64,000 nucleotides of DNA from Anthoceros angustus (Eukaryota; Plantae; Anthocerotophyta). Made by a program: the position numbers and the translations under genes. The DNA is taken from assembly GCA_010909165.1 (NCBI GenBank), contig MU008227.1, positions 1-64,000 of the forward strand, read 5' to 3'. The notes below the pieces were generated by a model, which made no database searches, had not been told where the DNA came from, and saw only the letters and a program-made list of their open reading frames with translations. Positions 1 through 62,820 of the stretch are shown piece by piece (the stretch's first letter is position 1; each line of letters starts with the position of its first letter).

Positions 1-480
1 CAGAGGGCCAAGGAGGTGAGGCTCGGGACCTCGGCACTCAGGACCTAAGGGACTGATTAGGTCCGAGAGAACCAGCGGACTCGCTCGGGCTGCGGTATGG
101 AGGTCCTTAGCGGACCGTGAGATGCCGCTCCCTAGCGGACTTTTGGGGGGCCTCACCAATGGCGGCCGTGGAAGAGACACGGCGGGTCACAGCTACCGTC
201 ATGGGCGGTATGCTCTGGTCTCTGGGACGAGAAGACCCGGAGGTGGAAGCCAGGCGCATGGTGCTCCTCCGGGCAGATGGCGGCCAGGAGGCGAGGAAGG
301 CGAAGCTCTCGGCCGCATCGAAGAAGGGAAGCGGGAGGCGAAGAAGTCCACCATCGGCGGACGGAGGTTTCTTCAGGGGTGGTAGGCGAGCCTGAGAGGC
401 ACAGGTGAGGATCTCGACCACGAAGGAGGAGGCGCGGCCCGGGGCGGAGACTGGCGACCAGGTGGCGGCTCGGCCCATGT
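1..480 (+). mobile_element. Fragment of the Gypsy family G/J accessory ORF (ORF X), middle part
   Basis: Aligns by eye with 53563-54060 and with the reverse complement of ~37600-38170 (shared gccaaggaggtgaggctc...gacctaaggg...gattaggtcc and MVLLR.DGG motifs). Confidence 0.8.
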
Positions 481-35591: not shown

Positions 35592-38500
35592 TGTCGCGTC
35601 TTCTTGGCCAGTCAGTCGGTAGCGCCCAATCCGTGTCGTTGTAGTAGGAGGTCCGTTCCCAAGAGAATGATAGGCTCCGTTGGCCCCGTTTTGTCGTTTC
35701 TCACCTCACGTAGTACGTTTCGGACTCCACACACACATTCATCGTTTCGACCTTCTCGTAGCGTTCACCAGACGGGCCAGGCGTGGCCAAACGTTTAAGG
35801 ACCCGTTCGCGTCCGTATCATTCAAGTTTGTCACTCGTCCCTCTGGTCCGTTCCTCTCACCATTCACACTTCACTCATTATCCTTGGAGAAAATCGCGGG
35901 TGGCTGCGCGGTCCGGACCTCCTCCGTCGCTCTGCCAGGCCTCTCCGTCCGGGCTCTACACGCCCTCCGAAGTTCCTCTGGCTCACGCGTTCCGGTCCGT
36001 CCGACGCTGGGTCGCTGCTCGAGATGAGCAAGGGTCCCGGGTCGCCCTTCCCTGCACACACCACCACACGTTAGGGTCCGTCACCAGGACCTTGATCGAT
36101 CTCTCGGGCGCCGGGCACCTTTCGATGACTCGGGACTCACGCTGAAGGCACACAAGGGCTGCAAGAGCAGCGGCATCAACACCAAGAAAGATGCTTTACT
36201 TTGCAAGCGGCCTTAGCCCTCTTATACTACGCCCAAGGTCGGCGTCTTTATTACCTATTACGGTGATGGCCCCTCGGTCGCCTGTCGGCCGCCTACTATT
36301 TCCCTTATTCCACCTATCTCGCCGTCGGTGGTGGGTGCAGGGTTGCCCAGTTCGCCTTGGCTGGCGTAGCCCTAGCCACGACAAGCTGCGGCGCGCAATC
36401 GGATGATCCGCGGCCCTACCTCTCCCGAGACTACTGTTAGGCTGCGCTACCGGCGGCGGCCTGACAACGGCGGTCACCACTAAATCCTCCTCCCCCTCCT
36501 CTCTTATCTGTTGGCGGGCCACGGTTCGTGGGCCCTCAGAAGATGGATTACATTTGGTGATTGGTGGCCCCTCCGCTCCACAGTCGAACGAGGTCCAGTC
36601 TCGACTCCGGAGTTCGGACCTCTAGGTCCGGTCTTCTCTTCAGGGTCCGGACCTCAGGATCCGGTCTTCTTTCTGGAGTCCGGACCTCGGGGTGGACTCG
36701 CCTCTGAGGTCGATCTTGGGCCTTCCCCCAGGTCAGGACCTCGGGGTCGGTCTAAATCACTAAGTCTGGACCTCTGAGTCGGACTTTCTTCGAGGCGGAC
36801 CTCGGTCGGCCTTTCTTCAGTCAGGACAAAGTCCGGACTCCACGGCTACGTTTCCCCCTCATTTGGACTTCTCAATGGTTCTGCCCAGGTCCTCCCATGT
36901 TCCCGGTTGCCCGGAGCCGCCCCTTCTACGGCCCCCCCAGGGCCCTCCTCCCCTCCTTCCGTGGTGAGGTGCGGAGTGCTTACCTCAGGCGCAGCGGCCT
37001 TCCCTACGTCCTGCTCCTCCAGCTGCTCCCCCTCGCCGCTGCTGCTGTCGTCGTCAAACAGCGCTCCTAAGGTCCCCGTGGCCGTGCTATCTCCGGGGCC
37101 CTCCTCCCTCGCTCCTCCTTCTGACCCATCTGGAAATCCGTCCACCTGCCGTGGGTGGCGCGACACCTCCAGTGCCTTGAGAAGCTCAGCGGCTGGTCGC
37201 CGCTTCCTTCTCCGAGGCGGGCGGTATCTCCATGCCCGACTCTGGCTTCCTCCAGGCTCCTTCTTGACTGGCGTCCAACTCCTTGGATCGCGCCTATTCT
37301 CCTCCGTCTTGATGAGGCGCTCTATCTCTGCTTTCGAAGTCTTGGATTCTCCCGTTGAGAATCCCGTGTTATGCTCCAGCGTCTTGGAGTTGCGGCTCGG
37401 TGTCCTTCTTTGCCTTCCGGCTCTGCCCGCTCCTCACTTCCCTGCTTTTGAGTCCCCTATTTTGGTGCTGGCCTCCATCTCTTCCTCAGCGGCTCGCCGC
37501 ACTTTTGCTCAGCGCCACTGTTGGCCGTTGGCAGCTGCCGTCGTCTCTCTCCACGGATTCGAATCGTCGGTAGTGATCGATGCGACGCCAGCGCGGCTAC
37601 CTCCGCGCGCCTTCACTGACCTCGCCCGGCTTGGTGTTGGTCTAGCCGAACCGCCTCGGCCGGTCAGCGGGCGTTCTCGCCGCCTGACCCTCCTCCGCCT
37701 CCTTGGCATACGCCCTCCCGTTGGAGGTCTTGAGTGCTTGGGCCTCCTGCGCCCAGTGCCGTTGGAGGTTCTTGGTCGGTCTTCTTTGGACCGTGGGACC
37801 TCTCACTCCGGCGTTTTTCCCTCCTCGATTCGGCGAGGATTCCTTCTTCTTAGCATCACATTTGCCTCCACGCTCGGAGGAGCACCATGCGCCTTCTTGT
37901 GGCCTCCACCTCCACAGGTCTTCTCAGTAGTCCCATAAAGACCCCAAAGCATCACCAGATCCATATTGTAAAGCCAGGCTGCCCAGCGTTCCTCCACAGC
38001 TACGGCGGAGATGCCAGTCGGCTAGGCACGGGCATCTCGGTCCGTTAAGGACCGCCATCTACTGATCCGGGAGGCGAGTTGATTTGGGCTCTCCGGACCT
38101 AATCAAGACCCTTAGGTCACGAGTGCTGAGTCAGGAGCCTCACCTTCCTTGGCCCTCTTGGCGCTAACTCCTCTCCTCAGCCCTTTTCCTCCACAGGGCT
38201 CGAGGTAGTGATGAAGGGTTCGGGGGCTGGCCCTTTGCCTCTCCCGGTGGAGGCAGGGGCCAGCGAGCTCGGTGGGGCTGCGGCCGGTGGCCTCCGCTCC
38301 TTGGGCGGCGTCCCTTTCCGCCGCCTTCTGCCTCCTCACTTCTTGCCACTCCGTTGGCGGAGGCAAGAACACAGGCGCCGTCCAGGTCTTTGCGTTGGCG
38401 GCCGTCTTCACTTCGCCGGTTCTGCAGGGTCCGGGGCTCAAGCGTTGTTGTTGTGGTTGGCTCTTTGCGGGCTGGAGGCCTAACTCCGATCTGTGGCCGC

Positions 38501-40035
38501 CTCTTCCTGCGCCCATTTGCTCGGTGGGGCACCGGAGAGGAAAGCGAGATGTCCTCCACACACTTCCCTAGGTGGCGGCGAGTCGCTCGGGCGTATGGAG
38601 TGAATCCCCTCAGTCGTCCTCCTCCGGACCCTCTTACTCCGGTGGGCCAGGCCTCCGCCTCCTGCGCTCTTCCACGCCTCCCGGTAGGCGGCGGCCCCTT
38701 CAGTGCTGGGTTCCTCTTCACTCTCGCCGGGAGGTTCGCGTGCCCCACGCGGGTAAAATAAGCGATAGCCGTGAGTGGCTTCTTCGCACCTCGACTTCGA
38801 GCTTCTGATTGACCAGGCGGGAATTATCTTGCACGGTCGGTAGCGTTTACGCCATGGAGTCGTGGAGGAACGCTAGATTATCCCCAAAAGGTGGTCCACC
38901 TTGGTGAGCATATTCAGGTGGGCGATAATGCCGCCCAGGCGTGCCCTCATCCAAGAGGTCGACGCCAGCCATCCGTTGGAGGACAGCTGCGTTCTGGTGC
39001 AAAGGCATGCAGCGGCTTCCACCTTCCCCTTCACCTTGAGGGTTATTTTCTCCTCCTACTTCTCCTGGCGGTAAACCACCCTCGGGACCTCCACAGTCCA
39101 CCTCACAAGGTCCTCCAGCGAGTTCTTGGATCGGACCTCCTTGTTGGCCCGTTCCCAGCTCTTTCAGGCGTACTCCGGACTGGGTAGGAGCAGCCTTCGA
39201 AGGTTCGAGCGGCTGGAAAATGTCAGTGCCACTCCTCCACCCGGCTCCTCCGCCTCCTCCGGCCACGGCCCGAAGTCGGGTGGCGGCGACAATGTTGCGC
39301 TCCACCAGCGCCATGGCTTCTCCCACGCCTCCGCGCTTTCTTGGGTCCCATCTTCACACTCCTTACCTTGTTCCAGCTGACAGGAGGCTCACAATCTCTC
39401 ACTCCTTGGTGCGCGGCGTGGGTTGCCCTCGCCAAAGTGAACCGCGGAAGGGTGCACAGCGATCAAAAGACAACGCCCGAAGCCGGGTGTCACGGCGAGA
39501 GAATCTGCAATCGCCCGGCGAAGTTGTTTGGAAGAATGACCTCGCCTACGCTTCTCTCCGTCGGAAATGCTTGGTCGCGGAAGGGCTCTTATTGTTGTCA
39601 TCAAGCTGTCGAGCGGCTTACTCTGCGCCTGCAGCCACTTCCGCTTACTCGGCCTTCTGTTGCCGCGGTGCGGAGCATGAATACACGCTGCTGACCCTTG
39701 GCAATGCTACGATCACAGTGGTGCTGCATGCCGTCTACCGCTACCTACCATCCGTGGCGCCGCCACTCTAACTCCGCTCCAACTTCTAAGTTACTTTTCT
39801 TGGCGTGCCCATCCGTTTTGGCCGGGGTAGAGTCGGGACTTATCGATACTCGGTGCATGGTCGGAGGTCCTCGAAGTGGGCTCGGTCCAGTTACCACACG
39901 GTCCAGATGCGATCCGAAATGCGGTCGAGATCTGAGTCCGTTGCTTATTCCTCCCTCTCCGCCTTATTTTACTCCATACCTCTGAAAAAACAAACCCGAC
40001 TTATTCCTAACCCCAAGGGACTCGTTGTCCACACA
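35592..40035 (-). mobile_element. Gypsy G 3' terminal repeat (~4.4 kb): spacer, ORF X, TCCGGA repeats, internal PPT and ~890-bp distal block
   Basis: Begins TGTGTGG at 40035, two bases after the purine tract GATGAGAATGGGAG that follows the integrase stop, and ends GACGCGACA at 35592. Confidence 0.75.
36850..39351 (-). pseudogene. ORF X: accessory ORF of Gypsy G/J (MGPKKA...PDFGPWPEEA..., coiled-coil C-terminus)
   Basis: ATGGGACCCAAG at 39351; colinear with 52456-55140, 56930-58900 and 62820-61830; frameshifted in every copy. Confidence 0.7.
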
Positions 40036-40079
40036 TACTCCCATTCTCATCATTTGGCGTCTCCGCCAGCACTAGGCAT

Positions 40080-43000
40080 AATCTTCTTCACTACACGTTT
40101 GACGGGTGGGCAGCGATTCACCATCTAGTTGCGGTGAGCGGACCCATTCGCGTAGACACACTACTGGTAAGGCCCCATCCGCCATATGAAGTGAAGCTTT
40201 GCGGGAAGTGCATATGGCGATAAGTAAAGAAGGGCGGATCTCCTCCTTCACATACTCACCTTGCAGTCGGCCGGTCGTGCCATAGCGGCGATTTTGTACG
40301 ATTGCATTACATGCTGCGCCTCTTCTCGACCTTGGTATGCTGGACAAACCCTTGCACCGGATTTACCTTCTCCGCGTCCTGGCCCGCGGGGATGGTAACT
40401 TGAAGTATCCGATCGTGCGCATAGTTAGCTTATTGAGGATGCGTGAGATAAGTCCGTTGGTCTTCTCCGTTAACCCATTGGCCTTGGTTGTATGGCCGTC
40501 TTGCGATGAGTTATGCAGTAGTTAAGTCATTAGGTTATCATCATTGAGGAAATGGTTCCCCTATAAACACCCTGCAGCGGGCACCGTGCGGCGTGATGAT
40601 GTTGTTTACTTTATATCATGCATTCAGCCTAAGACATAGGCTAGAAAGCATAACACAGAGGTATGTATTAATGAGCGGAGAATATCTTAAATACAAAATT
40701 GATGTGTCTCTTGAGTTCGTATCTAACCTCTAGTATAGAAACTAAGGTATAAACTATGTTAGGGTTTCATTCCTAACACTCCCACTAAACCAACATGGTT
40801 TATACAACCATAGGTTTGAACTTACAATCATTGTATACAATTCATGACTACTCTCAATGGCGTTACGTACTCGGATACACCGCATGGAGCTCACGTCTTC
40901 CTTGTATCTTGCTGGATATATTCAGCATTGATTACGCGCACAAACCTAAAGATGAAGACACGCCTGGAGCTTCACGTGCCCCTGCTGAGTCCTCGACACA
41001 CCAACATGAAGAGAGCTAGCAGCCTGGGAGTGGGGCACGCGGACGGTGCGACACGCCGAGCAAATCGCAAGTAGCACCGCAGGCGCCCTCCCGATTCGTG
41101 GCGCCCTCCGGAAGGGCTCCACAATTTTAATTGAGCTGGAATCCTCGAGTCAACCCGACATGACCAACATAGACACGCCGACAACACCACCGACGGCGAC
41201 TCGGCGTGGAGCTTCCCTCATCATCAAGCGGAGGAAGAGCTCCCACTGCACTTATGCTAGAACGGCAAGTTCTGCCATGGCAACCCCGGATGAAATGGAA
41301 GCTCTGGTAGAGAGGAGGTGGCCCGGCAGACAGTAGAAGAGGAAATGAACAAAGCTGCGCCGGACGAAGCCTTCGACGCATAGGGATCAGCAGCGGAGCG
41401 GTGAAGCGTGTGTGTGCATCGTAGTCATGCCCCTCTGGGAAAAGCATATAAGGTGGGTTTTCTACCTAATCCTGTTGCATTCCATGTCCGCGTTTTGATT
41501 TCAAGCTAAAGCTTCATCCTCCGAGACATGCATCGACACCACTAATCTAAGACTGACCTTCCCTTGCGGACTATGAGCCAGGCCATTCCTCATCGTAATA
41601 GTGGCGGTGGCCACTAAGGTGCACACCCTATGTGTGAATAGCAGCGATCTCTGTTTTAGCCATAGACACTGAGATAGTCGGTTGCTTTCTTAGAGTAGGG
41701 CGCTTGAGACCTAAAGGCAGCCATGTGCTGAAAATGTTTGGCCTTTGGGAGCCCTTTAGTAAATATGTCTGTTGCGGTGAGTGCTTATGTATTGCACCTT
41801 GATAGCTCCTCGTTACGCTTTCGTCCCTAATATAGTGATGGTACAATTCTATATGCTTAGTAATGCGTGGAACACAGGATTAGAAACAAGGGCTATAGCA
41901 CTCATGTTGTCACAAAGGTCTTGTGATAGGGCCTTCCGAGTTTGGTTTCTTGACTCGAGGCTATCGTTGCCATTCGGTCTCATGCGAGGCATCTGTAGAG
42001 CTTTGTACTCCGCCTCGATTGAGGACGAGCAAGTGAAATGCCTTCTTCTGACTCCGGTGGCAGACCACGAGGGCGGCAAGAAACAATATGCCCGGGACTC
42101 CCGAGTGTCGGCCGACCGATCGGCATCGGCAGAGATAAGTGTCAATGTACTCCCACTAGATGTATATTGTAGGCCATAGGAGATAGTTCCTCGGAGATAT
42201 CTATATATCGTTTAACGGCTGCCCAATGCAACCGTCCAGTTGTTTGAGGAATTGGGAAGCGCTTTAAGCGATATCGGCCTCGTCCAATTTGCTAGAAAAA
42301 TCAAGCAACCCACCAGTAAGGCACAAGACTCATATCGAGATCTCTTGGGACTCGGTGGTGACATGTCATGTGTCAACTTCTCCCCCACAGCTGATGGTGT
42401 GGCCACAGGACGAGCCGCATCCAAATTAAACCGCTTCAGGATTTCCTTAAGGTACTTAGTGCAGTGTAAATGTAATCGCTTTGTTTCTAAGAATCAATTC
42501 CTAGGCGGTGTAGTTCACCACAGTCCGTCATTTCGAACTCCTGCCGTAACATGTCTTTAACTCTGTCCATCTGGCCTAGGTCATTACTAAGAAGGACACG
42601 ATCATCCACATATAAGGCCAAGATGACAAAAGCACAGCTGAGATAAAATACATTGGTATCCGGGACTTTGAAGAAAACCCATTACATAGTATTTCATAAT
42701 ACGTTTATACGTGCCCGAGGGCTCTGTTTCACCGTAAATTGTCTTGAGGAGTTCTATGACTTTCTTAGCAGCCTTCTATGAACCCTTGGTTGCGGCATGT
42801 ACAAAGTTTCCTCGAGTTCACCGTGGAGGAATCGCACACATCCATCTGGTGCACTTCCAAGTTGTACTCTGCGGCCATTGCAAGCAAAATTGAATGGACG
42901 GGCTTAACCTTTGGGAAAACGTCTCACCATAGTCTATACTGTGGATCGACTAAACCCCTGCAACTAACCACGGATTTATAGCGTGCAATTGTTCCGTCAG

Positions 43001-46000
43001 TTCAACTTGGTCTTGAAGACCCACTTACAACTAATGGGCTTTCTTCCTGCTGGTAAGTCAACAAGCTCCCATGTATTGTTTTTAATGACGTATACTCGTC
43101 ATCTATGGATTTCCATGATGTTCCCCATCGGGCCATTCAGAGCCTCAGGTAAGTCGAGGATCCGGTCTAACATCGGGTACATAAAGATGCAAGCGTTTGC
43201 AGTCTGCGAAATCCCGAGCTTGATAAGGTGGTTCCAGCCAATTTTCCCTTGTTAAATGCTTCACGAGTTGGGTACCTAGTCTCGGTGAACTTCATCTAGA
43301 TGATTGTCTCGTGCGGGATCACCAACATGGAAATCAACATGAAAACACATCATCGAGAACCTTGCATGGACAGCTCATCATCATCCATCGTGAGGTACAT
43401 CCTCAAAGATCCGTCAATCGATCCAAGTCATCTTGACAGAGTAGGAGCGGCAGGCAAGGTATCCGGCAAATCCTCGATCTGCTCGACTTCATTTATGTTG
43501 CCATTAGCATACGGCTCGATCAGGCGTCTCGTGATCTGTCATCGTGGGTGGATCTCCATCGTCTGAGGATATGTGTAAGGAGATATGGAGAAGGATCTTC
43601 TTTGAGGGAAGGTGAAAGAAATGGATCAACAGTGGTTTAGGAGACAACTCTTTGAAAGTATAGGCTGCGTGATAAGGTAATCTTGGATGTTTGAGGGTCA
43701 TATAACTTGTAGGCTTTAGACTCCTCGAATACCCCGAAAGATCAAGGGTTTTGACCTATCATCTAACTTCCCTCTTTTGGCTTCTTGAGGATATAGGCAA
43801 AAGTGGAACCAAAACACGAAGATGAAGAAGACTAGGTTTCCTGCCCCAAAAGCCTTCATAGGGTGTCCGTCCTGGAAGAGCTGAAGTGACCACTTGATTA
43901 AGGATGTATGTGGCCGTCTGTGACCTCGCCAATTCTTTTGTGATGAGGCCCAGGAAAGCATGCTCCTGGTCATCCCCATCAGCGTTTGATTCTTGCGTTC
44001 AGCAACTCCGTTCTGCTGCTGGGTATAAACAGCACAATGTCGAATGATACCAAAAGCTGGAACAGTGATCAAACTTATAACGTGAATTCTCCCGTTATAC
44101 TAAACTTAACTAATTTTCTGTTTGACGTTGAACCATTGGAATCCAGAAGCAATGGTCTCAAAGACGTCACTTTTAAGCTTAAAGGAAATGTCCAAGTGTA
44201 ACGGGAAAAATCATCTGTGAGAGAGAGATAGTATTCTCCCCAAGAGACTTAAGGAAGTTTTCCATGATATCGCATGAATGAGCTCTAAGGCTGAGTGGCC
44301 CTTGTACTTATTAAAGGGTAGCTCTTTTGGCTTAGATAAGACACATGAGCTACGTCAAGATGTTTGAAACATGTAGGAAGTTGTTCTGTATGTGACGCAG
44401 CGACATTAGATCTAGCTTAGTTTTGTTAACATGACCTAAACGTGCGTGCCAGAGATTAGCCTGCAACTTATAAGCAGCAACTAGTGCCCTGACCTTAGAC
44501 TTGTGGACAGTAACCAACTGATACAAGTCATTAGTAAGAACAGCTTTAGCAACTAATACATCAGGACAGGACTGCCTATATATATAGCACTTCCTGTGCT
44601 CAAACTTAAAGCCATACTGCTGACTCTGGACAAGAGCTCTAATGGACAGCAGATTCTTGCTCATCTCAGGTACAAACAGAACGTCAACTAGATGCAAGGC
44701 TGCGCCACCAAAGCAGTATGTCCGAACTGTCCCTTTTACCTCCACGCCTCGAGCATCACCCACATACACATTGAGGTGGCTATGCGTTGGAGAACAGTCA
44801 CGGTTGTTGCGGATATGCATCCACAATCCAGAGGATGTCATTCTTTATAAGAGGCGTGAGGCAAAGCTGAGGACAAGATACTCCCACTCTTGTGTTGAGA
44901 ACCCGCATACATTCCTTAGAAGTTACATTAGCTTTGGCTTTGGAACTTTTGGGCTCCCCCTGTTTCTTCTTCCGACAGTCCCTTTCCCAGTGACCCGGAA
45001 TTCCACACCAGTTGCAGTTGCCCTGGCGTTTGGTGGCTCCTCCAGTCAAGGTATGTTTATTCTGGACACCACTGCTGTTATGTTTCTCCTTTTTCTTATC
45101 CTCCCCCTTCCAAGGTCCTTTGCCCTTAGCAGCAAATAGGACCTTGTCACCACGTAGGCGACCTCCAGAAATTGTCTTACGACTCTGTTCTTCTTGAAGG
45201 AGAGCACCAACAACTTCATTGAAGTTAATGGTGGATGATCTACCAGCTCTGGATATGAGTCCCTAAGAGATGCATTGCTGGACACAACGTCGATATGAGG
45301 CAGGAGGTGGCAATGAGCTGGCGTCATGTCCACCTCCGAGATTTTGCTATTGAGCCCAAGCTGTGCTCTAAGATAGCGCAACTTGGACACATGTGCTCCC
45401 AGATTCTCCATCCTTCGACGCAAAGCATGGAAAGCATTCGCGACTACCAAATAGTATAAAGTGCGTGTCGACTAAACATTTCCATGCTTTCTTCTTGTTA
45501 AGAAACTCCACCTCGATAGCGGTGGTTTCATCCGATCGCGGGATCGCAAAGGCGATCTTGTTGCCCTTCTTCCACTTGTCTATGACATCCGGCGGGTTGT
45601 TGTTCACCGGCAGAACAATGGAAGGATTCGGAGAGAACCATCAGCATACTCCCACACGTCGCGGCGTTGAGGTGTGCCTTCATGCGAGCTCTCCAACTTT
45701 CAAATCGGACCTGTGTCCCGTCAAATCTATCCTTTTCTTTGAACTCACCTGAGTAGGATGAGCCCAGAGATGTTGTAACAGGAGCAGATGTAGACATTTC
45801 GACTGTGGAGATAATGGGCGAGGGGTACGAGTGCGAATAAATAGCCAAAAGAATGGCTCAGAATCTGAATCACTATCTGAATCAAATATGGACATAAACT
45901 ACAAGTAAGTTATGTGTTACGTGTTGACATGTGAATTAAGCTAACAGGGACTGCAGAGGTGTGGACTAGGGAAGAAGCACGTGAGAGAGGGAAGGTGATC

Positions 46001-51781: not shown

Positions 51782-54700
51782 TGTGGCTACGGACTTCCCT
51801 TGGGGGTTAGGAAATAAGTTGGGTTTTGTTTTTTTCGTAGGTCCGAAGTGTAAAATAAGGCGGAAAAGGAGGAATAAGCACGGGCCGGCGCTCGGATGTA
51901 CTCCGGAGTGTACTCCTCGGAGTAGGTGCGGACCCGGTACCACCCGAGCCACGGACCACACGGTATCGGGATAGGGAGTCCAAACCCACTCCGGGTCAAA
52001 AGCAGGATAAATACGCCTTGATAACTTAGAAGTTGAGTCGTGAGTCAGACGGCGCCACGTGGGCCACAGATGGAAGCGGGCATCACCCGAGCCGGGCAGT
52101 AGCCTTGGAGGCCGTTATAGCGGTATTCACGCCCAGCGTCTTGCGCAGTAATAAGGCGGAGTAGGCGGGCGCAAGGTGAGTAAGCCATGCGAGACCTCGC
52201 GCGATTCACGGGGAAGGCACCCTCATGGCGGTTACTCCCAGCAGCGGCCGGCGAGGAGGTCATTTCTGCAATCGACCTCGAGACAATTCTCGCGGTCTCT
52301 TGCGCTCACGCACCGCCCTCTGGCGCTATCTCTCCGAGCAGCTCGGGCACCTTGGCAGCTCACCTTGGGGTTGGAGGCGTGAGCAGCCGTGAGGCGCATC
52401 GTGCCAGCCGGCGATCTCGGACAATCGTCTACAGCGGAGTAAGAAGAAGAAGGCGATGGGACCCAAGAAGGCTGCGGAGGTATGGGCGCCATGGAACTGG
52501 TGGGCGCAACATTGTGCTATCCGGACTTTGGGCCGTGGGTGGAGGAGGCGGGGGGATTGGTCGAAGAGTGGCACCTAGGCGTGTTCAGTGTATGCGGACA
52601 TTTGGATGTCACCCTAGTCAGGAGTTCGCCGGAAGATGTTGGCGGCCAACAAGGAGGTTCGATCCAAGAACCTCGGAGGATCCTGAGGTGGACCTTAGTC
52701 GAGCGGCTTACACGCCCGGCGAGATTGGGCGTAGTCAGGGAACCTCAAGGCGGGGGAAAGATAGAGGCGGCGGGCGGCGTGAAGCCGGCGCGTAACAACC
52801 AAGCGGTGGTTGATGTCGACTGCTGGACGGGAGGTGAGGCGGTAGCCGGATCATTATCCACGGAACACACTCACCAGGTGGATCGCACAGTGACAATTTA
52901 TTAGTGTTCTGCATGCGCTGCGGCGAGGAAAGAAGGGCTGGGAAGGATCATCTTAGCGTTCGGAAGGCCTGGTGAGGTGCGAGAAGCCACCTCCATCGGG
53001 ACTATCCCCATGTCGATCCATGTGGGGACACTCGACCTCAGAAGGATGGGGAAGCGGGCGCTCGGGAAGGGCGGCCCTCAGAGCGGAGGCGGGCAAGGCG
53101 CCCGAGGTGAGCCCGACCCCTAGGGCCAAAGCAGGTCAGGAGGAGACGGCAGGAGGATTCGGACTCCATACGTGGGCGGACCCCTCACCTAGGGAAGTGT
53201 GGGAAGATATCCCCGCTTCCTCCTCTTGGTGCCCCACCGAGCACCAAGGCAGCAGAGTCCCGAGCGGAGCGGCCCCGACAAATTTCACCACCACCCACGA
53301 CGGCAAATGAGCCCCGACGACTCCGGGGCCAAGAGGCGGAAGACGGTGCCACCCGCCAACGCAACACTCTGGACGGCACTGCGCCGCCCACGGAGTGGCA
53401 AGAGGTCAAGAGGCGTGAGAAGGGCGAAGAGACGCCAAGGAGCAGGAGGTCACCGGGCAGAACCCCACCTGAGCCGGTCCTGCCGCCGACCGGGAGAGGG
53501 CCGCCTCGAACCCTCACCCTCCGAGCCCTGTGACGAAGAGGGCGAATAAGGAATTGGCGGCCAAGAGGGCCAAGGAGGTGAGGCTCCTGACTCAGACTCA
53601 GACCTAAGGGACCCGATTAGGTCCGAGAGCCCAGCCCCGACTGGCCTCCCGGATCATGGAGGTCCTGGCGACTGCGTGAGATGCCCGCCCCACAACGGAC
53701 TTTTGGGGCCTCACTAATGGCGCCGTGGAAGAGACACTTGTTCCGGCCACATGGACTATGCTCGGGGTCTCTGGACGGCCGAGAAGACCCAGGTGGAAGC
53801 CCAAGGAGGCGATGGTGCTCCTCCAGTGAGCTGGAGGCGCCCAGAGGCGAGGAGGAAGGCGTGCCCGGCCGCATCGAAGAGGGAAGCCGGAGGCCGAAGA
53901 GAAGTCCGTCCATTCGACAGATCGGATAAGTTTCTTCACCGGGTGAGCAAACAAGGTGCACAGAGGCCCAAGCCGGCCGAGGATCTCCGCCAACGAAGGA
54001 GGGAGGCGCAGCAGAGGCGAGAGGGCTCGCGACTGGCCGAGGCGGCCCGGCGCCCAACAGATCGGGCGAGGCTCACCAAGACGGGAGGCGGAAGCCACAA
54101 AGATCGACCGCGATCACTATCGGCGTGATCGAACCGGGAGGAGGAGGCCGGGTAGCCGCTGCCAACTCAAGGCCGAAAGCAGTGTAGCTGAGCAAGCCGA
54201 GCCGTGAGGAGGCATCGGAGGTCAAGACCCCGAAATGGGACCTCGTGGTGCACCGCAGGAGGCAGAGGGAGGCGGGTGAGAGAGGACAAAGAAGCGACAC
54301 CTTGAGTTGCAACCCAAGACGACGGAGCAGCAGGGGTTCTCAACGAGAGAATCCAAGACTTCGAAAGCGAGAGATAGAACGCTTCCAGCCTCCGAAGACG
54401 GAGGAGAATAGGCGGCAAGGAGTTCGACGTCAAGGCCGCAGCAGGAGATGGCGTAAGTCGAGTCGAACGGGATACCGCCTCGGAGCAGCGACCGGAAAGA
54501 GTAGACGGAGAGGAAAGCACGGGAGGAGAAGCAATGGTCCGTCCGGCCAGGAAGTGAGGGGAGCTCACCTCCATGGCCCGCAACCGAAGTGAGCCGAACA
54601 ACGACGTGGAGGTGGAGAACGCCGAGCGCAGCCGAAGGCCGCAGAGGTAACGGAGGCGCCCGGGACGGCTCAAGGGAGTCCGCCCGCCATACCGGTGCTT

Positions 54701-56930
54701 GGCCACTGAGACGGGCCACAGAAAGGACGACATGCCCACCGCCAGAGCACCTATCGAGGAGGGAGCGGTCGTGCCCGGCTCATGTGGAAGAGGCGACCGC
54801 TGAAGTCGATTCGACCGCCTCCCCTACCACGCAGAGCTCCTCAAGGCTCTAGAGGTCCCGCCACCCCAGGTGGAGGGTGGACCCTGCATGGCCTGAAGGA
54901 GGTGCAAGGGAGGACGGACTGGGACAACAAGTACCACCTGGAGCCCTAGGAGCGCCTGCTTGATTTACTCAGCAGAAGCAATGTAGGGAGAGCAACGGAC
55001 GGGAGCCGGAGGAGGAAGGGTCACACCGGGAGGTAAGCACCAAGACCCCTCATGGAAGGAAGGAGGCTGATCTTGGGAGGCTGCGGAAAGGTCGCGAACC
55101 GGCATTCGGGAACCAAGGAGGGCTGGATGAGCCTGATCACCGGCCGATCACACTGGGACCGCCGTAGCCGTGAGCAGCGTGAGAGGCGACCGCTCAACGC
55201 GGAGAACTCCAAACGGCAAGAAGCACCAGAGACTGGTCGGATCGTGAGGGAGGAAGTAGCACCAAGTCGCGGCGGTGGGAGCGGTTCTCAACCCTTGCCG
55301 GTCGCGATGGCAACAACGCCGACCAAGCAAGCGATTCTCTTGGAGGTAAGAAGGAGAGAGACGCCGAAACCTTCGTGGAGGATGTCTCGCAAACTTCAAC
55401 GAGAAGGTTCGATGCGAGCCTTATCCAAATTGCTCCAAGGGGTCCTACGGGGACAGCCGCCGCTGGTACCGAGGAAGCACGCCGCCCCAACGCCTCCCGC
55501 AACCTTCAAGCATTGAAGGATGCCTTCTAGAAAGATTCCGTGAATTGATCAAGAAGGCTATGTCCCTTGTCCAAACTCGAGAACCAAGGCAAGACGGAGA
55601 AGTTGGGATCGAGCATCGAACGGTTCTACGGACCAAGACCCACCCACACCACCATGCGGCGTTGGTTCGCATGGCTTATCCAAGCCAATGGCTAACGTAC
55701 GGCCGCTGGCGTAGAAGGATGTGAGCAAGGCGGTCCGAGCGGAGAACTACGAAGAATCGATGCACCAACGACGGCCGAGGACGCCCAGGAAAGAAGAAAA
55801 AGAAGAACGGGGTCGGATCAAGATGAAGAACCCTCGAAGAGGAGGATGATGAGACCGAGGTAGCATCGGAGGAAGAGGAAGAGGACTCAAGAAGAATCCG
55901 AGGATGGAAGAAGAGAAGAACCTCAAGAATAAGAAGAAAAGCCCGTCAAGTCGTGAGGGTGGAGAAGAAGGAGGTTATGATGCCCGCACGGTGCGAGAGG
56001 TTCCCGCCTCGACCCAGCCTCCTTTGAAAGAAGTAGCGGTTGAGGGAAGATCCGAACGGGTAATGAAGAGGGTGGAGGAGTTGACGATCAACCGTGAAGG
56101 ATAAAGAACGGCGGAAGGCGGCCACCACGTCCGGACTCATCCTATGGTGTGCGTGTGTCACCAACATGGGCATTCAAGGCTAACCGCCTCCGCACTGCGT
56201 GGAACTGTGGAGTATGACTCACGGGAAGAGTCCGAGGAGCAAGTGGAGGACATACCAAGTGCAAGAAGCACCACCGCCGGTATCCCAAGACGATGTACCC
56301 ACGGCAACTGGCCATCCGTGCATCGACTGCAAAGACCGCATGGGAGCCCCTCCAGAATTCTGGCGGCGGTGGTCCTGAACTGGGAACCCCGCACTACTCC
56401 AACGCTGTCCATACCCCACCCCAAAGGCAACGGGACTTTGAACTGCGGTGGAGATTGTAAGCGTGGCACATGGCGTGCAAGACCAGTGTCCGAATCCTCG
56501 CTCGAGGACGGCGCCACGCCACCCCCTGGGGAGCCGCGACACCACGCCCTCCCTAAGGCCGCGCACAGATTGAAGACGACACCGGGCGAGGAAGAGGCCA
56601 AGGAACTTGAACGGAGTGGTACGGGAGTCTGCTAAGGAGGAGAAGGCGACCGGAGGTACTGAAGTGTCAACCCGTCACCGAAAGGAGCGAAAGGAGAGGA
56701 GACAAGAAGAGGAAGAAAATGGGGACACCCAACGGATACGGAGGACGGACACCATGAAGGAGGAAGATCCAATTTAAGGAAGGCGAAGAATTGGGTACCG
56801 AGGAAGTACCAACCAAACCCCAAACGTTAGGAAGAAACGGATCACCCAAGGCAACACCCCGCCCACCGGATGTGGTTCGAGAAGTGGCGGAGATGCTTCA
56901 GAAGAGATCCGACAGACCCGAGGTGGTCCT
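51782..56930 (+). mobile_element. Gypsy J (same family as G), 5' part: spacer, ORF X, internal deletion, gag
   Basis: Starts TGTGGCTAC, aligning with the G repeat start at 40035; ORF X from ATG 52456; jumps at ~55140 into the gag leader; gag 55307-56930 (MATTPTKQA, VRTH.WCAVC). Confidence 0.8.
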
Positions 56931-59900
56931 GGCGCTTCTCTCCTCGATGCCCCCACCCAGCAAATGCACAGAAGAGGCGGCCAGGACGGAGTTGGCGGCT
57001 CCGGCCCACTCCGCGGCCGCCACCAATCCATAACAACAACAACGGCCGAGTCTCCGACTAACGGAATCAAGAGGCGGAAGACTACCATCAGCCAACGCAG
57101 ACCCAGACGGCGCCTGCGGCTCTTGCCTCTACCAACGGAGTGGCAAGAAGCGGAGGAGGCAAGTGACGGGGCCAGTGACACGCCTCATGAGCTGGAGGCC
57201 ACGGCAGCAACCCACCCGAGCTCGTTCTGCCTCCGAACGGAGAGGCAAAGGGCTGCCCCGAACCCTTCATCACCTCCGAGCCGGAGGAAAAGGGCGGAGA
57301 AGGAGTTAGCTGCCAAGAGGGCCAAGGAAGAGAGGCTCGGACTCAAAGACTAGACCTAAGGGTCCCGATTAGTCCGGAGAGCTCGGCCCCACCGCCTCCG
57401 GATCGCAGATATGTCCCTTAACGGATCGGAGATGCCCATGCCCACGGACTGGCATCTCCCGCCAGTAGTCAGTGAGGAAAACGCTGCTGGGTTTTAGCTA
57501 CCGTCATGGACTGATGCTTTGGGGTCTTATGACTACCGAGAAGACCCAGGAGGTGGAGGCCACAAGAAGGCGATGGTGCCCTCCAGAGCAGTGGAGGCAC
57601 CTGATGCTAAGAAGAAGGCGGAATCCTCGCTCGAATCGAGGAGGAAAACGCCTGGAGGCGGAGCGAGAGGTCCTGACGGTCCAAAGAAGACCGACTAAGA
57701 TCCTTCACCGCAATACCTGAAGGCATGCAGGAGGCCCAAGCACGGCTGAAGACCTCTCGCAAACGGGAGGCGGCTGAAGGAGGCGGAGGAGGGTCGAGGG
57801 CGCGGAGAACGCCCGCGACCGCCGAGGCGGCCAGACCAACACCAAGCCGGCGAGGCTCGTGTGAAGGCGGCGCGGAGGCGGAAGCCAGCCAAGGTCGATC
57901 GGGATCACTACCGACGCGATGGAACCGTGGAGGGAGACGGGCGGGTGCTGCCTAACAAGGCCGTGTGGCAGTGGCCGGGCAAAGCGAGCCGCGAGGAAGA
58001 GATGGAGGCCAGACCCCGAAAATAGGGGACCTCCGTGCACTGCAGAAGTGAGGAGCTGCAGAGCCGGAAGAACACCGAGCCGCAACTCCAAGACGCGCTT
58101 GAGCAACACGGATTCTCAACGGAGAATCCAAGACTTCGAGCAGAGATAGAGCGCCCGCCTCAAGACGGAGAATAGGCGCGATCCAAGGAGTTGGACGCCG
58201 CCAGTCAAGAAGGAGCCGGAGAAAGCCGTGAGTCGGGCGAGATATCGCCCGCCCGGAGAAGGAAGTGGCGGACCTCCGGGTAAGGATGAACGGAGGGACG
58301 AGAGCGCTGGAGGAGGAGCAGAGGCTGCTTGTCCGATTGCGGGAGGCAGAGGGGGAGCTCAGCTCCATGGCCAGCAAATTGGTGGAGCTGCAACCGCGAA
58401 GGGAGGAGGAGCACGCCGAAAGCAAAGAAGGCCGCAGGAGGTGTTTGAGGCCGCCTTGGCGGCATCAAGGGAGTCCGCCCGCCAAGGGCTTGGCAAGCGT
58501 GGCGACGGAGACCTCAAGCAGGACAACACGCCACCGCCGAGCACCTTTGGAGGAGGGAGTACCGGTGCCCGAGCCCATGGAGGAGGCAATCCAAATGTTG
58601 ACTCGACTTTGCCTACTACCACGCCGAGCTTCTCAAGGCAATGGAGGTGTCGCGCCACCCACGGTGTGGACGGATTTCGATGGGTCAAGGAGCGAGGGAG
58701 GAGGGCCCCGAGATAGCACAAGACGAGGACCTTAGGAGCTACTGCTTGACGACAACAAAGAAAGGGGCCAAGTAGGGGGAGCATGGAGGAGCAAGACGAG
58801 GGAAGGTCAGCTGCCTGAGGTAAGCACTGACCTCACCAAGGAGGGGAGGAGGGCCCCGGGGGCCGAGAAGAGGCGGCTCCGCAACCGAGAACCATGGAGG
58901 ACCTGGGGTGGAACCATTGAGAAGTCCAAATGGGGGAAACCCAGCTGCGAGTCCTGACTTTGTCCGACTGAAGAAAGGCCGGACCCCGAGGTCCGCCTTG
59001 AAGAAAGTCCGACCGTGAGGTCCAGTTTAGTGACGGACGGACCCCGAGGTCCGGACCAGGGAAGGTGCCCAAGACGGACCCAGGCGAGTCCAGACTCGAG
59101 GTCCAGACTTAAAGAAGACCGATCGAGGTCCCACCGGAGAGAAGACCTGACCCAGAGGTCCAAACTCCCGGAGTCGAGACTAGACCTCAAGTTCTGCACT
59201 GTGGAGCTGGAGGGGCTACCAACCACAGAACTATCTCTTGAGGGCCCACAACTGTGGCCCGCCACGAGATAAGAGAGGAGGGGAGGAGGATTTAGTGGTG
59301 ATCGCCGCTGTCGCCGCCGCCAGTAGGCGCAATGACAGTAGTCTCGGGAGAGGTATAGGGCCCGCGGATCATCCGATTGCGCCGCATGTCGCTAGGGCTT
59401 GGCCGCCAAAGGCGAATGGGCAACCCTGCACTCCACCACCATGTAGATAGGTGGAATAAGGGAAATAGTAGGGACATAGCGCACTGCCGCCATCGTAATA
59501 GGGTGTAATAAAGACGCCGACCTTCGCGTAGTAAAAGAGGGCTAAGCCTAAGCAAAGTATCTTCTTGGTGTTGATGCCGCGATCTTCTGCAGCCCTTGTG
59601 TGCCTTCATGTGAGTCCCGAGTCAAAGCAGCCCGGCACCGGAGATCGATCAAGGTCCCGTGACGACCCTAACGTGTGGTGGTGTGTGTGCAGGAAGGGCG
59701 ACCGGACCCTGCTCATCTCGAAGACTCAAACGGACGGACCGGAACGCGGAGCCGTGAGGAACTTTGAGGGCGCGAGCCTTGACGGAGAGACCCGGCAGAG
59801 ACCTGGAGGAGGTCCTGACCACAAGCAACCACCCGCAATTTTCCAAGGATAATGAGGAAGTGTGAATGGTGAGAGGAACGACCGTAGGGACGAGTGACAA

Positions 59901-60596
59901 ACTTGAATGATACGGACGCCGAACGGGTCCTTAAACGCTTGGCCACGCCTTCGTCCGGTGAACGCAGTTGTTAGCCGTAAAAACGAATGTGTGTGTTGAG
60001 TCCTAAACGGTACTACGTGAGGTGAGAAACGATTAAAACGTGGCCAACGGAGCCTATCATTCTCTTGGGAACGACCTCCTTACGACATCGACGGATTGTC
60101 TGATCGCCGGTGACGCGGCATTTGGCGCCTGGTCGGGAATGAGATCACTCCGTAGCCTAGTGGGAAGGTAAGTGTGGATGCGTGGAGGACGTGAGGTAGT
60201 CAAGAACGAATTGCTGAGTGAGCCGGACGTTGTGACCGCCAGAGCGCTCCGAGCGCAGGCACGTGAGAGGCGACGAGCTCAACGTGAGAGCTCCAGCCGG
60301 CAGGTAAGCACGGTAGACTTGTCGGATCGTGAGGAGGAAGTAGCACAAAGTCAGGCGGCAGTAAGGGGAGTGGTTCCTCAACCCCTGCTGGTCGTGGCGA
60401 TGGCAACAACATCGACCAAGCAAGCGTACTCTCTCTTTGGAGGTAAGAAGGAGAGGGACGCGGAAACCTTCGTGGAGGATTTCGTGTCTCAAGTAGCTTC
60501 AACGAGAAGGTTGATCTGTGCCTCATCCAAATTGCTCTAGGGGTCTCTGGGAACAATGCCTGGTGGTACCGGAGGAAGTAAAGCCACCACGCCCCG
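56930..60596 (+). mobile_element. Inverted 5' part of Gypsy G: ORF X C-half, repeats, distal block 59296-60120, PBS and gag N-terminus
   Basis: ...GACGCGGCA (60120) is followed by TT and TGGCGCCTGGTCGGGAAT (PBS, resembling the tRNA-Asp type); gag MATTSTKQAYSLFGGKKERDAETFVEDF at 60400. Confidence 0.8.
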
Positions 60597-62820
60597 TGGC
60601 GCGATTTCACTGGCCACCGGCACAATCCCGTGTCGTTGTAGTAAGGAGTCCGTTCCCAAGAGAATGATAAGCTCCGTTTGCCTTGTTTTGATCGATTCTT
60701 ACCCTACTTTGTGACCGCTCAACCTTAACACACACACAATCGTCGTTTTGCACCTAACTATTCATAATGTTCACCGAACAGGCCCGGTGTGGCCAAACGT
60801 TTAAGGACCCGTTTGCGTCCGTATCGTTCACGCACGTCACTCGTTCCTCTAGTCCGTTCCTCTCACCACTCTCACTACACTCATCAACTTTGGGAAAGAA
60901 CGCAAGTGGCTACAGTCACCTCCTCCTGCTCAACCGCCTCTCCGGCTTTGCACGCCTCCCGAGTTCCTCCGGCTTCACACGCCTTCCGATCCGCTCGGCC
61001 GACGGGCCGCCCGAACGAACAAGGGTCCCGCCGCCTTCCACACACACCACCACCACACGTTAGGGTCCGCCACTGTGACTCGATCTCTCGGCGCCGTGCC
61101 TTTCGGTGACTCAGACTCACGTTAGCAAGAAGACACACAAAGGTCCGTAAGAAAACGCAGATCAACACCAAGAGAAGATGATTTATTCAAAGCGGCCCTC
61201 ACTTTTATACTACGCCAAGGTCGACGCCTTTATTACACCTCTATTCGAACGCCAGGCCACAGCCCTAAACGCCGCCTACTATCCCCTATTCCTCCTATCG
61301 CCGCTTGGCAAGGCTGGGCCGATGGCCTCGATTCCTTCAGCACCGCGCCCAAAGCCGAGCTCCGACGATCACGTGCGCCCAATCAAATGATCCGTGAGGC
61401 GGACCCTTCCTCCTCCGGGGGTTCGGGTCGCGCCACGGCGGTGGTCGACAACGGCGGTCACCACTAAATCTTCCTCGCCTCCTCTTATCTCAAGGCCTCG
61501 CAATGGGCCTCCAGGCCGGATCTGGGCCGTGATTGGTGGCTCTCCTCCACTTCCTGAAGTTCGACCTCGTGGACCCTGGCCCCACTGAGTCCGGACCTCT
61601 AGGTCCGGGGTCTTCTCCGGGGTCCCAGGCTCGTGTCCGCTCGAGTCCGGACCTGGGTCCGGACTTGCCTCCGGGTCCGGCCTGACCCAACCCTTCCCTA
61701 GAGTCCGAACCTCGTGGTTCGGACTCACACTAGAGTTTGGATCTCAAGTCCAAACTCCTTCGTGGGCCTGGACTTGATCCGCCTTTTCTCAGAGTCCGGA
61801 CTTTGTCCTGACCGCAGTTCTCACGCCTCCTGCTGATCACGGCTCATCCACCGAGCCTCCTTGGTTCCCGAATGCCCGGCGACCTTTCCAGCCTCCCAAG
61901 ATCCGCCTCCTTCCTTCCATGTGAGGGTGCCGAGTGCTTACCTCCGGTAGCGACCTTCCTCCTCCCCGCCGCTCTCTCGCCGCGCTGCCAAATGGCCCTT
62001 GTGGCTCCCGTACGCACTGCCCCGGGTCCGGCCCTCCCTTGCACCTCCTTCCCGACCTTTCCGGGAGTCCACCTCCGCCTAGGGTGGCGCAGACCTCCAG
62101 CCTTGAGGAGCTCATGTGGTAGAGGCGGTCGGACCGACTTCATGAATCGCCTTCCTCCACATGAGCCCCGAGCACCTTGCAGACTTCTCCTCCAGAGGTG
62201 CTCCGGCAATGGGCATGTCGTCCCCGCCGCCTCTGTGGCTAAGCTTAGTCACCGTAGGCGGGCGGACTCTTGAGGCCGCTGGCTCACATTCCTGCAGCCT
62301 CACGTCGACGCTTCTCAATTTCGTTCCAGCCCGCCTTATGGCCATGGAGCCGAGCTCCTTCGCTTCCTACAACCGGACGAGCAATGCTTTCTCCTCCGCT
62401 CACTCTTTCCCGAGGTCCGCCATTTTCCAAAGCGGGCTGTATCCCCTGCCTCGACTTCACTGCCATCTCCTCGCCGCAGCCTTTGCGACGCCGAACTCCT
62501 TGCACCACGCCTATTCTCCTCCGTCTTCAAAGCGGAGCTGGAGGCATTCTATCTCTCGCTCAAGTCTTGATTCTCTGAGAACCCCTGCCTCAAGGCCTTG
62601 GAGTTGCAACCCAAGGTGTCCTTGCTGCCCTCCAGCCTCCCCGCCGCCTCTACCTCCCGCACTGCACTCGAGGTCCCCGATCTCCCGGTGACCTCGTGCC
62701 TCCTCACGGCCGACCGTTTGCTCCTCACGCCTTCGCCTTCAAAGTTGGCTCCGCCCCACTCGCCTGCCCACCGGCTTCGATCACGCCGATAGTGATCGCG
62801 GTCGCCGCTGCAGCCCGACC
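60597..62820 (-). mobile_element. Gypsy J 3' terminal repeat, inverted and truncated: distal block 60597-61463, internal PPT, repeats and ORF X C-terminus
   Basis: Colinear with 35592-37700; the terminal CA falls exactly at the gag junction 60596/60597. Confidence 0.8.

What the first reader, a model, noticed from the sequence alone, without database searches (positions are those of the whole stretch)
35592..62820. Gypsy family whose LTRs appear to be ~4.4 kb long and to contain a protein-coding gene
Seen in sequence: (1) After the G integrase stop there is a purine tract, then TG at 40035, spacer, ORF X, repeats and a distal block ending in CA at 35592. (2) The same ORF X, repeats and distal block also lie immediately upstream of the G PBS (56930-60120). 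(3) A second copy, J, inserted into G gag has one end exactly at the spacer TG (51782) and the other exactly at the distal-block CA (60597). The flanks look like an inverted 5-bp duplication (GGGAG at 51777-51781 versus degenerate C(T)CCC at ~60591-60595). Inference: the integrated termini are spacer-TG and distal-CA, so ORF X sits in U3 of both LTRs. Established knowledge: plant Athila/Tat/Ogre extra ORFs normally lie between the LTRs, while LTR-encoded genes are known from retroviruses (MMTV sag, HIV nef). I do not know a plant example. If real, even solo LTRs would disperse an intact gene.
Basis: partly seen in the sequence, partly recalled or inferred. Interest (0 to 1): 0.9.

Follow-up and report, generated by a model that had tools for sequence, protein, structure and literature searches.

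The report
Long-LTR Gypsy nest, no LTR gene
A cluster of old, broken Gypsy-type retrotransposons in a bryophyte-like plant genome very probably does have unusually long terminal repeats (3.4-4.4 kb), but the "gene" seen inside them is an open reading frame of the length that chance gives in this stop-poor DNA.

Summary
The structural observation largely holds. A 4,444-bp TG...CA unit (35592-40035, minus strand) starts 36 nt after the last pol ORF of element G. Copies of the same unit lie directly upstream of a leader/gag region at 51782-55152 and 56933-60120. A second element, J, sits in G's leader. J's ends are the first base of the "spacer" and the last base of the "distal block". The two G flanks overlap by 6 nt when each is fitted to J's intact leader. 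So the long-LTR reading is favoured over a short LTR plus a long pol-to-LTR region.

The picture is messier than described. G's 5' copy is truncated and inverted relative to the rest of G. No 5' LTR is complete. J's two LTR copies are less alike (about 66%) than G's (about 80%).

The LTR-encoded gene is not supported. ORF X (134 and 129 aa) is shorter than the typical longest chance ORF in these LTRs, whose sense strand has only 14-15% T. It overlaps a second open frame. It differs between copies by 12-15 mostly frame-shifting length changes and lacks an ATG in J. It has no Pfam family and no credible relative among 1.84 billion proteins.

Plant Gypsy LTRs above 3 kb are already known, so this is ordinary. 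Low interest.

The parts
35592..40035 (-). G 3' LTR, the only complete copy of the long unit (4,444 bp; TG...CA). Order in sense: spacer, ORF X region, short tandem repeats, distal block.
   Evidence: GC 60.7%, sense-strand T 14.9%.
38112..38516 (-). ORF X in the G 3' LTR (134 aa, ATG to stop). Judged a chance ORF.
36609..36827 (.). 27-33-bp tandem repeats inside the LTR. The counterpart in the U2 copy is at 58962-59053.
36180..36330 (-). Conserved AT-rich block with AATAAA and a TATA-like motif, ~590-660 nt before the LTR 3' end. Candidate core promoter or poly(A) signal (inference only).
   Evidence: Conserved in G3, U2 and E3.
40036..40602 (-). G internal region, last pol-side stretch: a 96-aa ORF ending at 40072, then a purine-rich 36 nt before the LTR. 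No domain detected.
40603..47248 (-). Nested Ty1/Copia element. LTRs of ~180 bp at 40603-40778 and 47067-47248 (94% identical). Perfect 5-bp target duplication GATGT. A TGGTATCAGAGC-type primer-binding site.
   Evidence: (Pol_BBD, gag_pre-integrs, zf-CCHC).
47249..51781 (-). G internal region (leader end, gag-like ORFs, decayed pol), one part. It includes the integrase zinc-binding domain ORF 47259-47924 and a 379-aa ORF 49937-51073.
   Evidence: PF17921, E 2.8e-10. (weak Ty3 Gag-Pol match). (379-aa ORF exceeded in 0.2% of shuffles). (no RT, RNase H or protease detectable).
51782..55152 (+). U1: J's 5' LTR copy (3,371 bp). It starts at the same TG as the G 3' LTR and lacks ~1.25 kb of the distal part.
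55153..56929 (+). J leader and gag-like region, truncated. 76-78% identical to G's counterparts. The primer-binding region is shortened.
56933..60120 (+). U2: G's 5' LTR copy. It lacks the first ~1.48 kb, is inverted relative to the G 3' LTR, and is 75-81% identical to it. It contains the ORF X copy at 56964-57353 (129 aa).
60121..60596 (+). G primer-binding-site candidate (TGG-initiated, 2 nt after CA) and leader. Its end and the start of 47249-51781 (read on the minus strand) are adjacent in J's intact leader.
60597..62820 (-). E3: the distal 2.2 kb of an LTR copy ending in CA at 60597. Taken as J's 3' LTR. It abuts unrelated 48%-GC sequence.
2..474 (+). A further fragment of the same LTR family at the window edge (73.5% to 53564-54051).

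Best explanation
The region is a decayed nest of Ty3/Gypsy-type LTR retrotransposons from one family group. It lies in a bryophyte-like land-plant genome.

The LTRs are unusually long (4.4 kb complete), GC-rich (~61%) and purine-rich on the sense strand. Nearly all of each LTR would be U3. It carries short tandem repeats, and a TATA-like/AATAAA block lies ~600 nt from the 3' end.

Proposed history:
1. Element G inserted on the minus strand.
2. A Copia element inserted into G's integrase region.
3. A related element J inserted, in the opposite orientation, into G's leader.
4. Later at least one inversion and one deletion put G's 5' part upside down between J's gag fragment and J's 3' LTR copy. 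They also removed J's pol and the proximal parts of two LTR copies.

ORF X is not a gene. It is one of several overlapping open frames that arise because the sense strand has only 14-15% T and therefore few stop codons.

Shown: unit borders, orientations, the nested Copia, the target overlap, and the ORF statistics. Inferred: the order of events, the U3/R/U5 partition, and that the long U3 acts only in cis.
For: Unit borders and positions:
- The borders are sharp and shared among copies.
- The unit follows the last pol ORF plus a purine-rich tract in G.
- It precedes a TGG tract and leader/gag in U2 and U1.
- Integrase H2C2 lies next to the 3' LTR, which is the Gypsy gene order (weak Ty3 match).

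Insertions:
- The two G leader pieces flanking J, fitted separately to J's intact leader, overlap by 6 nt at every piece length tried.
- The Copia element has a perfect GATGT duplication.

ORF X:
- An ORF at least as long as ORF X arises in 66-85% of local shuffles. The 379-aa gag-region ORF is matched in only 0.2% of shuffles.
- Stop-codon frequency is 0.031 per sense codon.
- 14 of 15 length differences between G's copies are not multiples of three.
- Amino-acid identity is 32-34% against 66-73% nucleotide identity.
- There is no frame preference.
- Conservation between G and J is no higher over ORF X than in flanking LTR.
- No Pfam or Rfam hit and no real homologue.
Against: - No copy shows a complete long LTR upstream of a primer-binding site. 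U2 lacks the spacer and U1 lacks the distal block.
- J's LTR pair (~66%) is less alike than G's (~80%), the reverse of what nesting predicts.
- The 5-bp duplication is degenerate (3/5).
- RT, RNase H and protease were not detectable in G, so 'Gypsy' rests on the integrase domain and its position.
- The coding tests have low power. G's two LTRs differ only by post-insertion decay, and even the gag-like region shows little frame signal between G and J.
- No other genomic copies could be retrieved.
Confidence: 0.72

Rival explanations
1. Retand/Tat-like architecture. The true LTR is only the distal block (~0.9-1.3 kb). Spacer, ORF X and tandem repeats form a long pol-to-3'LTR internal region. Their presence upstream of leaders comes from tandem arrays of elements that share LTRs.
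For: Retand elements have pol-to-3'LTR regions of 2.9-6.6 kb with extra ORFs and tandem-repeat arrays (PMC11963269; PMC7264820). That matches the order spacer, ORF, repeats, distal block. The TATA-like block lies in the distal block. No complete long 5' LTR is seen.
Against: J's insertion terminus is the first base of the spacer, not the start of the distal block. Its flanks overlap by 6 nt as after integration. Under this rival that border would be a rearrangement landing by coincidence on the base that follows G's purine tract. All three PBS- or terminus-adjacent copies carry repeats and ORF X-side sequence upstream of the distal block. The antisense ORFs give no Transposase_28/TRP28 or other Pfam hit.
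Confidence: 0.12
2. ORF X, or another LTR ORF such as the 386-aa antisense frame at 36778-37935, was a genuine accessory gene carried in U3 of active family members. It is seen here only in decayed form.
For: An ATG at the homologous position and an ORF of similar length survive in both of G's LTR copies. The 386-aa antisense frame exceeds the 95th percentile of shuffles, which is 331 aa. Accessory ORFs of retroelements often lack database relatives (PMC7264820). The coding tests here have low power.
Against: ORF X is within chance length. It overlaps another open frame. Nearly all length differences are frame-shifting. J has no ATG. The 386-aa frame is split in U2 and is only 40-46% identical at protein level. 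There are no homologues and no domains.
Confidence: 0.04
3. An alternative history. There was no nested J insertion. Instead an array in one orientation (LTR copy E3 abutting U1, J's leader/gag, a deletion, U2, then G) suffered a single inversion of 51782-60596.
For: One inversion restores colinearity of every piece. It removes the need for U1 and E3 to be one element's LTRs, which fits their low identity.
Against: It needs one breakpoint to fall exactly on an LTR|LTR junction. It gives no reason for the 6-nt overlap of the two G leader pieces. It also still defines the same TG and CA unit borders, so it does not rescue a short LTR.
Confidence: 0.1

Closest known systems
Rice Retrosat2 / RIRE3 / RIRE8 group (Ty3/Gypsy)
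   Same: Plant Gypsy elements with LTRs above 3 kb and multicopy cis motifs in the LTR. An extra ORF without database relatives accompanies gag-pol (PMC3485330).
   Different: Their extra ORF0 lies inside the element, upstream of gag-pol, is shared by many copies, and has measured Ka/Ks. Here the ORF lies in the LTR and shows no sign of being coding. No sequence relationship could be tested, because no RT was recovered.
Retand lineage (Tat clade) elements such as Grande, RIRE2 and Silene Retand
   Same: A long, repeat-bearing stretch between pol and the end of the element, with unexplained ORFs and tandem-repeat arrays (PMC11963269, PMC7264820).
   Different: In Retand that stretch is internal and the ORFs are antisense with a TRP28 domain. 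Here the stretch is part of the repeated terminal unit, and no TRP28/Transposase_28 match exists. Recently active Retand elements were reported only from eudicots and monocots (PMC11963269).
Ogre elements of legumes and LARD/Sukkula of Triticeae (from my own knowledge, not checked here)
   Same: LTRs of roughly 4-5 kb.
   Different: Different hosts. Ogre's extra ORF is internal and LARDs are non-coding. No comparison was run.
Retroviral U3-overlapping accessory genes
   Same: Only positional: an ORF within U3.
   Different: Those are conserved, expressed genes. ORF X gave no hit to any solved, Pfam or database protein. No comparator sequence was fetched or typed.

Membership tests
LTR retrotransposon, Ty3/Gypsy (Metaviridae) | A terminal repeat unit with TG...CA ends, present at both ends of the element | tested here: met
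   TG at 40035 and CA at 35592. The same start is at 51782 and the same end at 60120 and 60597. Caveat: G's two copies are now inverted relative to each other, and the 5' copy is truncated.
LTR retrotransposon, Ty3/Gypsy (Metaviridae) | A primer-binding site complementary to a tRNA 3' end just after the 5' LTR | tested here: inconclusive
   A TGG-initiated tract lies 2 nt after CA in U2. It is shortened in J. The window has no tRNA gene and no tRNA was available for comparison.
LTR retrotransposon, Ty3/Gypsy (Metaviridae) | A polypurine tract just before the 3' LTR | tested here: met
   15 of the 18 nt that end 2 nt before the TG are purines. This is weak, because the whole strand is purine-rich.
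LTR retrotransposon, Ty3/Gypsy (Metaviridae) | pol order PR-RT-RH-IN, with integrase last | tested here: inconclusive
   The integrase H2C2 domain lies next to the 3' LTR side (weak Ty3 match). RT, RNase H and protease were not detectable in ORF pieces.
LTR retrotransposon, Ty3/Gypsy (Metaviridae) | A 4-6-bp target-site duplication | tested here: met
   J: the flanks overlap by 6 nt in J's leader coordinates, although the duplicated bases are only 3/5 identical. G's own duplication is not testable, because its 5' end is missing.
Retand/Tat-type long pol-to-3'LTR region | The long region is internal, between pol and a much shorter LTR | tested here: not met
   The region starts J's insertion terminus and lies upstream of leaders in U1 and U2.
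Retand/Tat-type long pol-to-3'LTR region | An antisense ORF with the TRP28 (Pfam Transposase_28) domain | tested here: not met
   Antisense ORFs 36778-37935, 39040-39768 and 54170-54823 gave no Pfam family.
Retand/Tat-type long pol-to-3'LTR region | [quoted passage not shown] | tested here: met
   27-33-bp units, 2.3-3.2 copies.
LTR-borne protein-coding accessory gene | An ORF longer than composition alone explains | tested here: not met
LTR-borne protein-coding accessory gene | Reading frame and protein sequence conserved between copies | tested here: not met
   The power is low because the copies are decayed.
LTR-borne protein-coding accessory gene | Protein relatives or a recognisable domain | tested here: not met
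   Pfam none. phmmer against 1.84 billion representatives gave one repeat-driven hit to a tapeworm fn3 protein.
LTR-borne protein-coding accessory gene | Transcription and translation of the ORF | not testable with these tools
   No expression data for this genome.

The most novel reading that the evidence does not exclude
In active members of this bryophyte Gypsy family the 3.8-kb U3 carries a real accessory gene (ORF X or the antisense frame). Every LTR, solo LTRs included, would then disperse a gene copy. The window would show only its ruins.
Probability: 0.04. Interest if true: 0.7.

Novelty: new member of a known kind. Interest (0 to 1): 0.15.

Why it matters
If the LTR gene had been real, it would have been a first for plant retrotransposons and a new way of spreading a gene. 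As it stands, the region is a worked example of two things. First, GC- and purine-rich LTRs produce convincing-looking ORFs. Second, nested and inverted old elements can still be read through their unit borders. The modest point of interest is a Gypsy family with about 4.4-kb LTRs in a bryophyte-like genome, where such elements are little described. LTR finders with a low maximum LTR length would miss it.

Tried and rejected
- Finding relatives of the gag-region ORF and the integrase ORF with the search for homologous proteins: blank. The length window excludes polyproteins.
- Exact look-up of the DHHC protein to locate the source contig: not on record. The best DHHC relative is 62% identical, so the source genome is not in the protein collection and no further family copies could be fetched.
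- A 17-nt LTR motif shared by three copies, scanned in metagenome contigs: 120 loci. All were chance hits with at most 37 nt of similarity and were dropped. One is a human-gut community contig. I did not take it for human DNA, and none of these loci was used further.
- Integrase ORF against viral contigs: nothing.
- Pfam and PDB searches of the short sense ORFs between gag and integrase for RT, RNase H or protease: nothing credible.
- Rfam on the whole window and a tRNA scan: nothing.
- A first fitting alignment with wrong end-gap settings was discarded and redone.
- An over-gapped pairwise alignment was checked against MAFFT counts.
- Structure prediction of ORF X was not run. A single orphan sequence would give a low-confidence model whether or not it is real.
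All searches used single ORF pieces.
Full report
WHAT THE WINDOW IS. The only clear host gene is an uninterrupted 792-aa ORF at 22195-24573 (minus) with a DHHC palmitoyltransferase domain. Its best named relatives are from the liverworts Marchantia and Riccia (49-50%). One unnamed protein is 62% identical. The window therefore comes from a land plant of bryophyte grade whose genome is not in the protein collection. That is why no further copies of the element family could be fetched.

MAP OF 35592-62820 (self-BLAST; borders read). I name the four copies of the long unit G3, U1, U2 and E3.
- G3, 35592-40035, minus strand: the only complete copy, 4,444 bp.
- U1, 51782-55152, plus strand.
- U2, 56933-60120, plus strand.
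- E3, 60597-62820, minus strand.
- Between G3 and U1 lies G's internal region on the minus strand, split by a Copia element at 40603-47248. The Copia has ~180-bp LTRs that are 94% identical, a perfect GATGT target duplication, and Pol_BBD, gag_pre-integrs and zf-CCHC domains.
- The integrase zinc-binding domain PF17921 is in the ORF at 47259-47924. The same ORF gives a weak match to the Ty3 Gag-Pol chain.
- A 379-aa ORF at 49937-51073 is longer than the longest ORF in 99.8% of shuffles. It is probably gag, although it has no Pfam hit.
- After U1 come J's leader and gag-like region (55153-56929), 76-78% identical to G's.
- After U2 comes a TGG-initiated tract 2 nt past the CA, then G's leader (60121-60596).
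- A fifth fragment of the LTR lies at 2-474.

IS THE UNIT AN LTR? The start is sharp. In a G3/U1 alignment, the 60 columns before the TG match at 19/60, which is background, and the next 60 match at 41/60. Significant colinear similarity recurs through the spacer at LTR positions 16-94, 243-283, 684-940 and 1406-1518. In G the start lies 36 nt after the stop of the last pol-side ORF, behind a purine-rich tract. The end is shared by G3, U2 and E3, and the last ~22-50 nt also by U1. Beyond the CA the four copies diverge. In U2 and U1 the end is followed by the leader/gag. A unit that follows pol and precedes the leader is an LTR.

THE NESTED ELEMENT. G's leader stops at the E3 border, and the rest of G starts at the U1 border. 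I fitted the two pieces separately to J's own uninterrupted leader. They meet and overlap by 6 nt (J 55494-55499) at every piece length from 30 to 120 nt. That is what a staggered integration cut leaves. It makes the first base of the spacer and the last base of the distal block the two ends of an inserted element. This is the strongest argument against the rival in which only the distal block is the LTR and the rest is a Retand-like pol-to-3'LTR region (PMC11963269). Under that rival, the 51782 border would have to fall by coincidence on the base that follows G's purine tract.

WHAT DOES NOT FIT NEATLY.
- U2 is inverted relative to G3 and lacks the first ~1.48 kb. U1 lacks ~1.25 kb of the distal part. 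E3 lacks the proximal ~2.2 kb and abuts unrelated 48%-GC DNA. So no copy shows a complete long LTR in front of a primer-binding site.
- At least one inversion and one deletion are needed after the three insertions. The partner junction is not in the window.
- In the columns shared by all four copies, G3-U2 are 79.5% identical but U1-E3 only 66.3%, barely above U1-U2 at 64.6%. A nested element should have the more similar LTR pair. Splitting the distances by the four-point rule puts most of the excess on the E3 branch. I cannot explain this. Possible causes are misalignment in the repeat-rich section, gene conversion between G's copies, or E3 belonging to another element.
- A single-inversion history without a nested insertion would remove the paradox. 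It does not explain the 6-nt overlap, and it still yields the same unit borders.
- The literal 5-bp duplication is only 3/5 identical.

STATE OF THE GENES (counts only).
- G: the integrase region is interrupted by one nested insertion.
- G: the leader/gag side is interrupted by one insertion, and the element is split by at least one rearrangement.
- G: between the gag-like ORF and integrase, no sense ORF exceeds 79 aa, and RT, RNase H and protease are undetectable. The breaks there are many. They cannot be counted without a reference protein.
- J: the gag-like region has one truncation, pol is absent from the window, one LTR copy has one large internal deletion, the other has one truncation, and the primer-binding region is shortened.

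ORF X. The frames meant are 38112-38516 (minus, 134 aa) and 56964-57353 (plus, 129 aa). The evidence is against a gene.
- The sense strand of the LTRs has 14-15% T and a stop frequency of 0.031 per codon.
- Dinucleotide-preserving shuffles of the LTRs give a mean longest ATG-ORF of about 175 aa.
- An ORF at least as long as ORF X arises in 66-85% of shuffles of its local 1.2 kb. The gag-region ORF is matched in only 0.2%.
- A second sense frame (38167-38823) is open across the same stretch.
- In the MAFFT alignment, the two G copies differ within ORF X by 15 length changes, 14 of them not multiples of three. G-J and U2-J differ by 14 (13 not multiples of three) and 12 (9).
- Mismatches are even over codon positions.
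- Protein identity is 32-34% against 66-73% nucleotide identity.
- J's homologous frame has no ATG.
- tblastx scores are alike in all six frames.
- Conservation between G and J does not peak over ORF X. The local peak spans its end and the sequence after its stop.
- There is no Pfam family. phmmer against 1.84 billion representatives returned one hit, a repeat-driven match to a tapeworm fibronectin-type protein.
- The 386-aa antisense frame in G3 exceeds the shuffles' 95th percentile. It is split and poorly conserved in U2 and has no domain.

Caveat: G's two LTRs differ only by decay after insertion, and even the gag-like region shows little frame signal between G and J. These tests therefore cannot prove that no gene ever existed. 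They show only that nothing here argues for one.

HOW IT MOST LIKELY WORKS. The long unit serves as an ordinary LTR with a very large U3. A conserved AT-rich block with AATAAA and a TATA-like motif lies 590-660 nt before the 3' end in G3, U2 and E3. The short tandem repeats and GGAGG-type purine runs lie upstream of it. That is the usual place for promoter-proximal and enhancer-like repeats. This partition is inference.

COMPARISON AND NOVELTY. Plant Gypsy elements with LTRs above 3 kb are described as infrequent but known, for example rice Retrosat2, RIRE3 and RIRE8. These also carry an orphan extra ORF, but inside the element (PMC3485330). Extra ORFs in plant elements are reviewed as lying between the LTRs, mostly between pol and the 3' LTR (PMC7264820). 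Tat-clade elements occur in bryophytes (PMC13468544). G's lineage could not be assigned without an RT. Ogre and LARD LTRs of 4-5 kb are cited from my own knowledge only. The finding is therefore a new member of a known kind and of low interest.

A NOTE ON CONDUCT. To judge the target duplication, I at first lined up, in my reasoning only, the two ~20-nt G flanks end to end beside J's leader. Nothing joined was written to a file, a note or a tool call. The test I report compares the pieces apart.

Noticed in passing
window 22195-24573 (-): A DHHC S-acyltransferase encoded as one uninterrupted 792-aa ORF. Its closest named relatives are liverwort proteins at 49-50% and an unnamed one at 62%. Homologues in seed plants are multi-exon (from my own knowledge), so this may be an intron-poor lineage or a retrocopy.
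   Followed up: partly
window 18163-19873 and 19856-21571: A 1.7-kb head-to-tail duplication, 96% identical, just downstream of the DHHC gene region.
   Followed up: no
window 32000-34000: A block of 69.5% GC with staggered internal self-similarity (62-65%) and long overlapping ORFs on both strands. No Pfam hit.
   Followed up: partly
window 2547-12394: Another repeat-bounded structure: 4948-6658 resembles 9739-11505 (78%, direct). Inverted matches are 2547-3022 with 11921-12394 and 4267-4525 with 9334-9600. In addition, 7696-8987 weakly resembles the pol region of the nested Copia (41818-43106).
   Followed up: no
window 40603-47248: A nested Copia element with very short (~180 bp) LTRs, a perfect GATGT duplication and an initiator-Met-type primer-binding site. 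It is much younger than its Gypsy host (LTR identity 94% against ~80%).
   Followed up: yes
window 38085-38115 (-), 57350-57380 (+), 53590-53620 (+), approximate: A short conserved inverted repeat (7-bp arms, ~9-nt loop) directly after the ORF X stop in three LTR copies. It is among the best conserved spots of the LTR.
   Followed up: no
window 58270-58622: About 350 bp present in U2, U1 and E3 but absent from the G 3' LTR, so the 'complete' 4.44-kb copy has itself lost sequence.
   Followed up: partly
window 28311-28554 and 34032-34262: A 240-bp dispersed repeat pair, 80% identical and in direct orientation, flanking the GC-rich block.
   Followed up: no
window 62821-64000: Sequence of 48% GC with no similarity to anything else in the window. 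It cuts off LTR copy E3, and its nature is unknown.
   Followed up: partly
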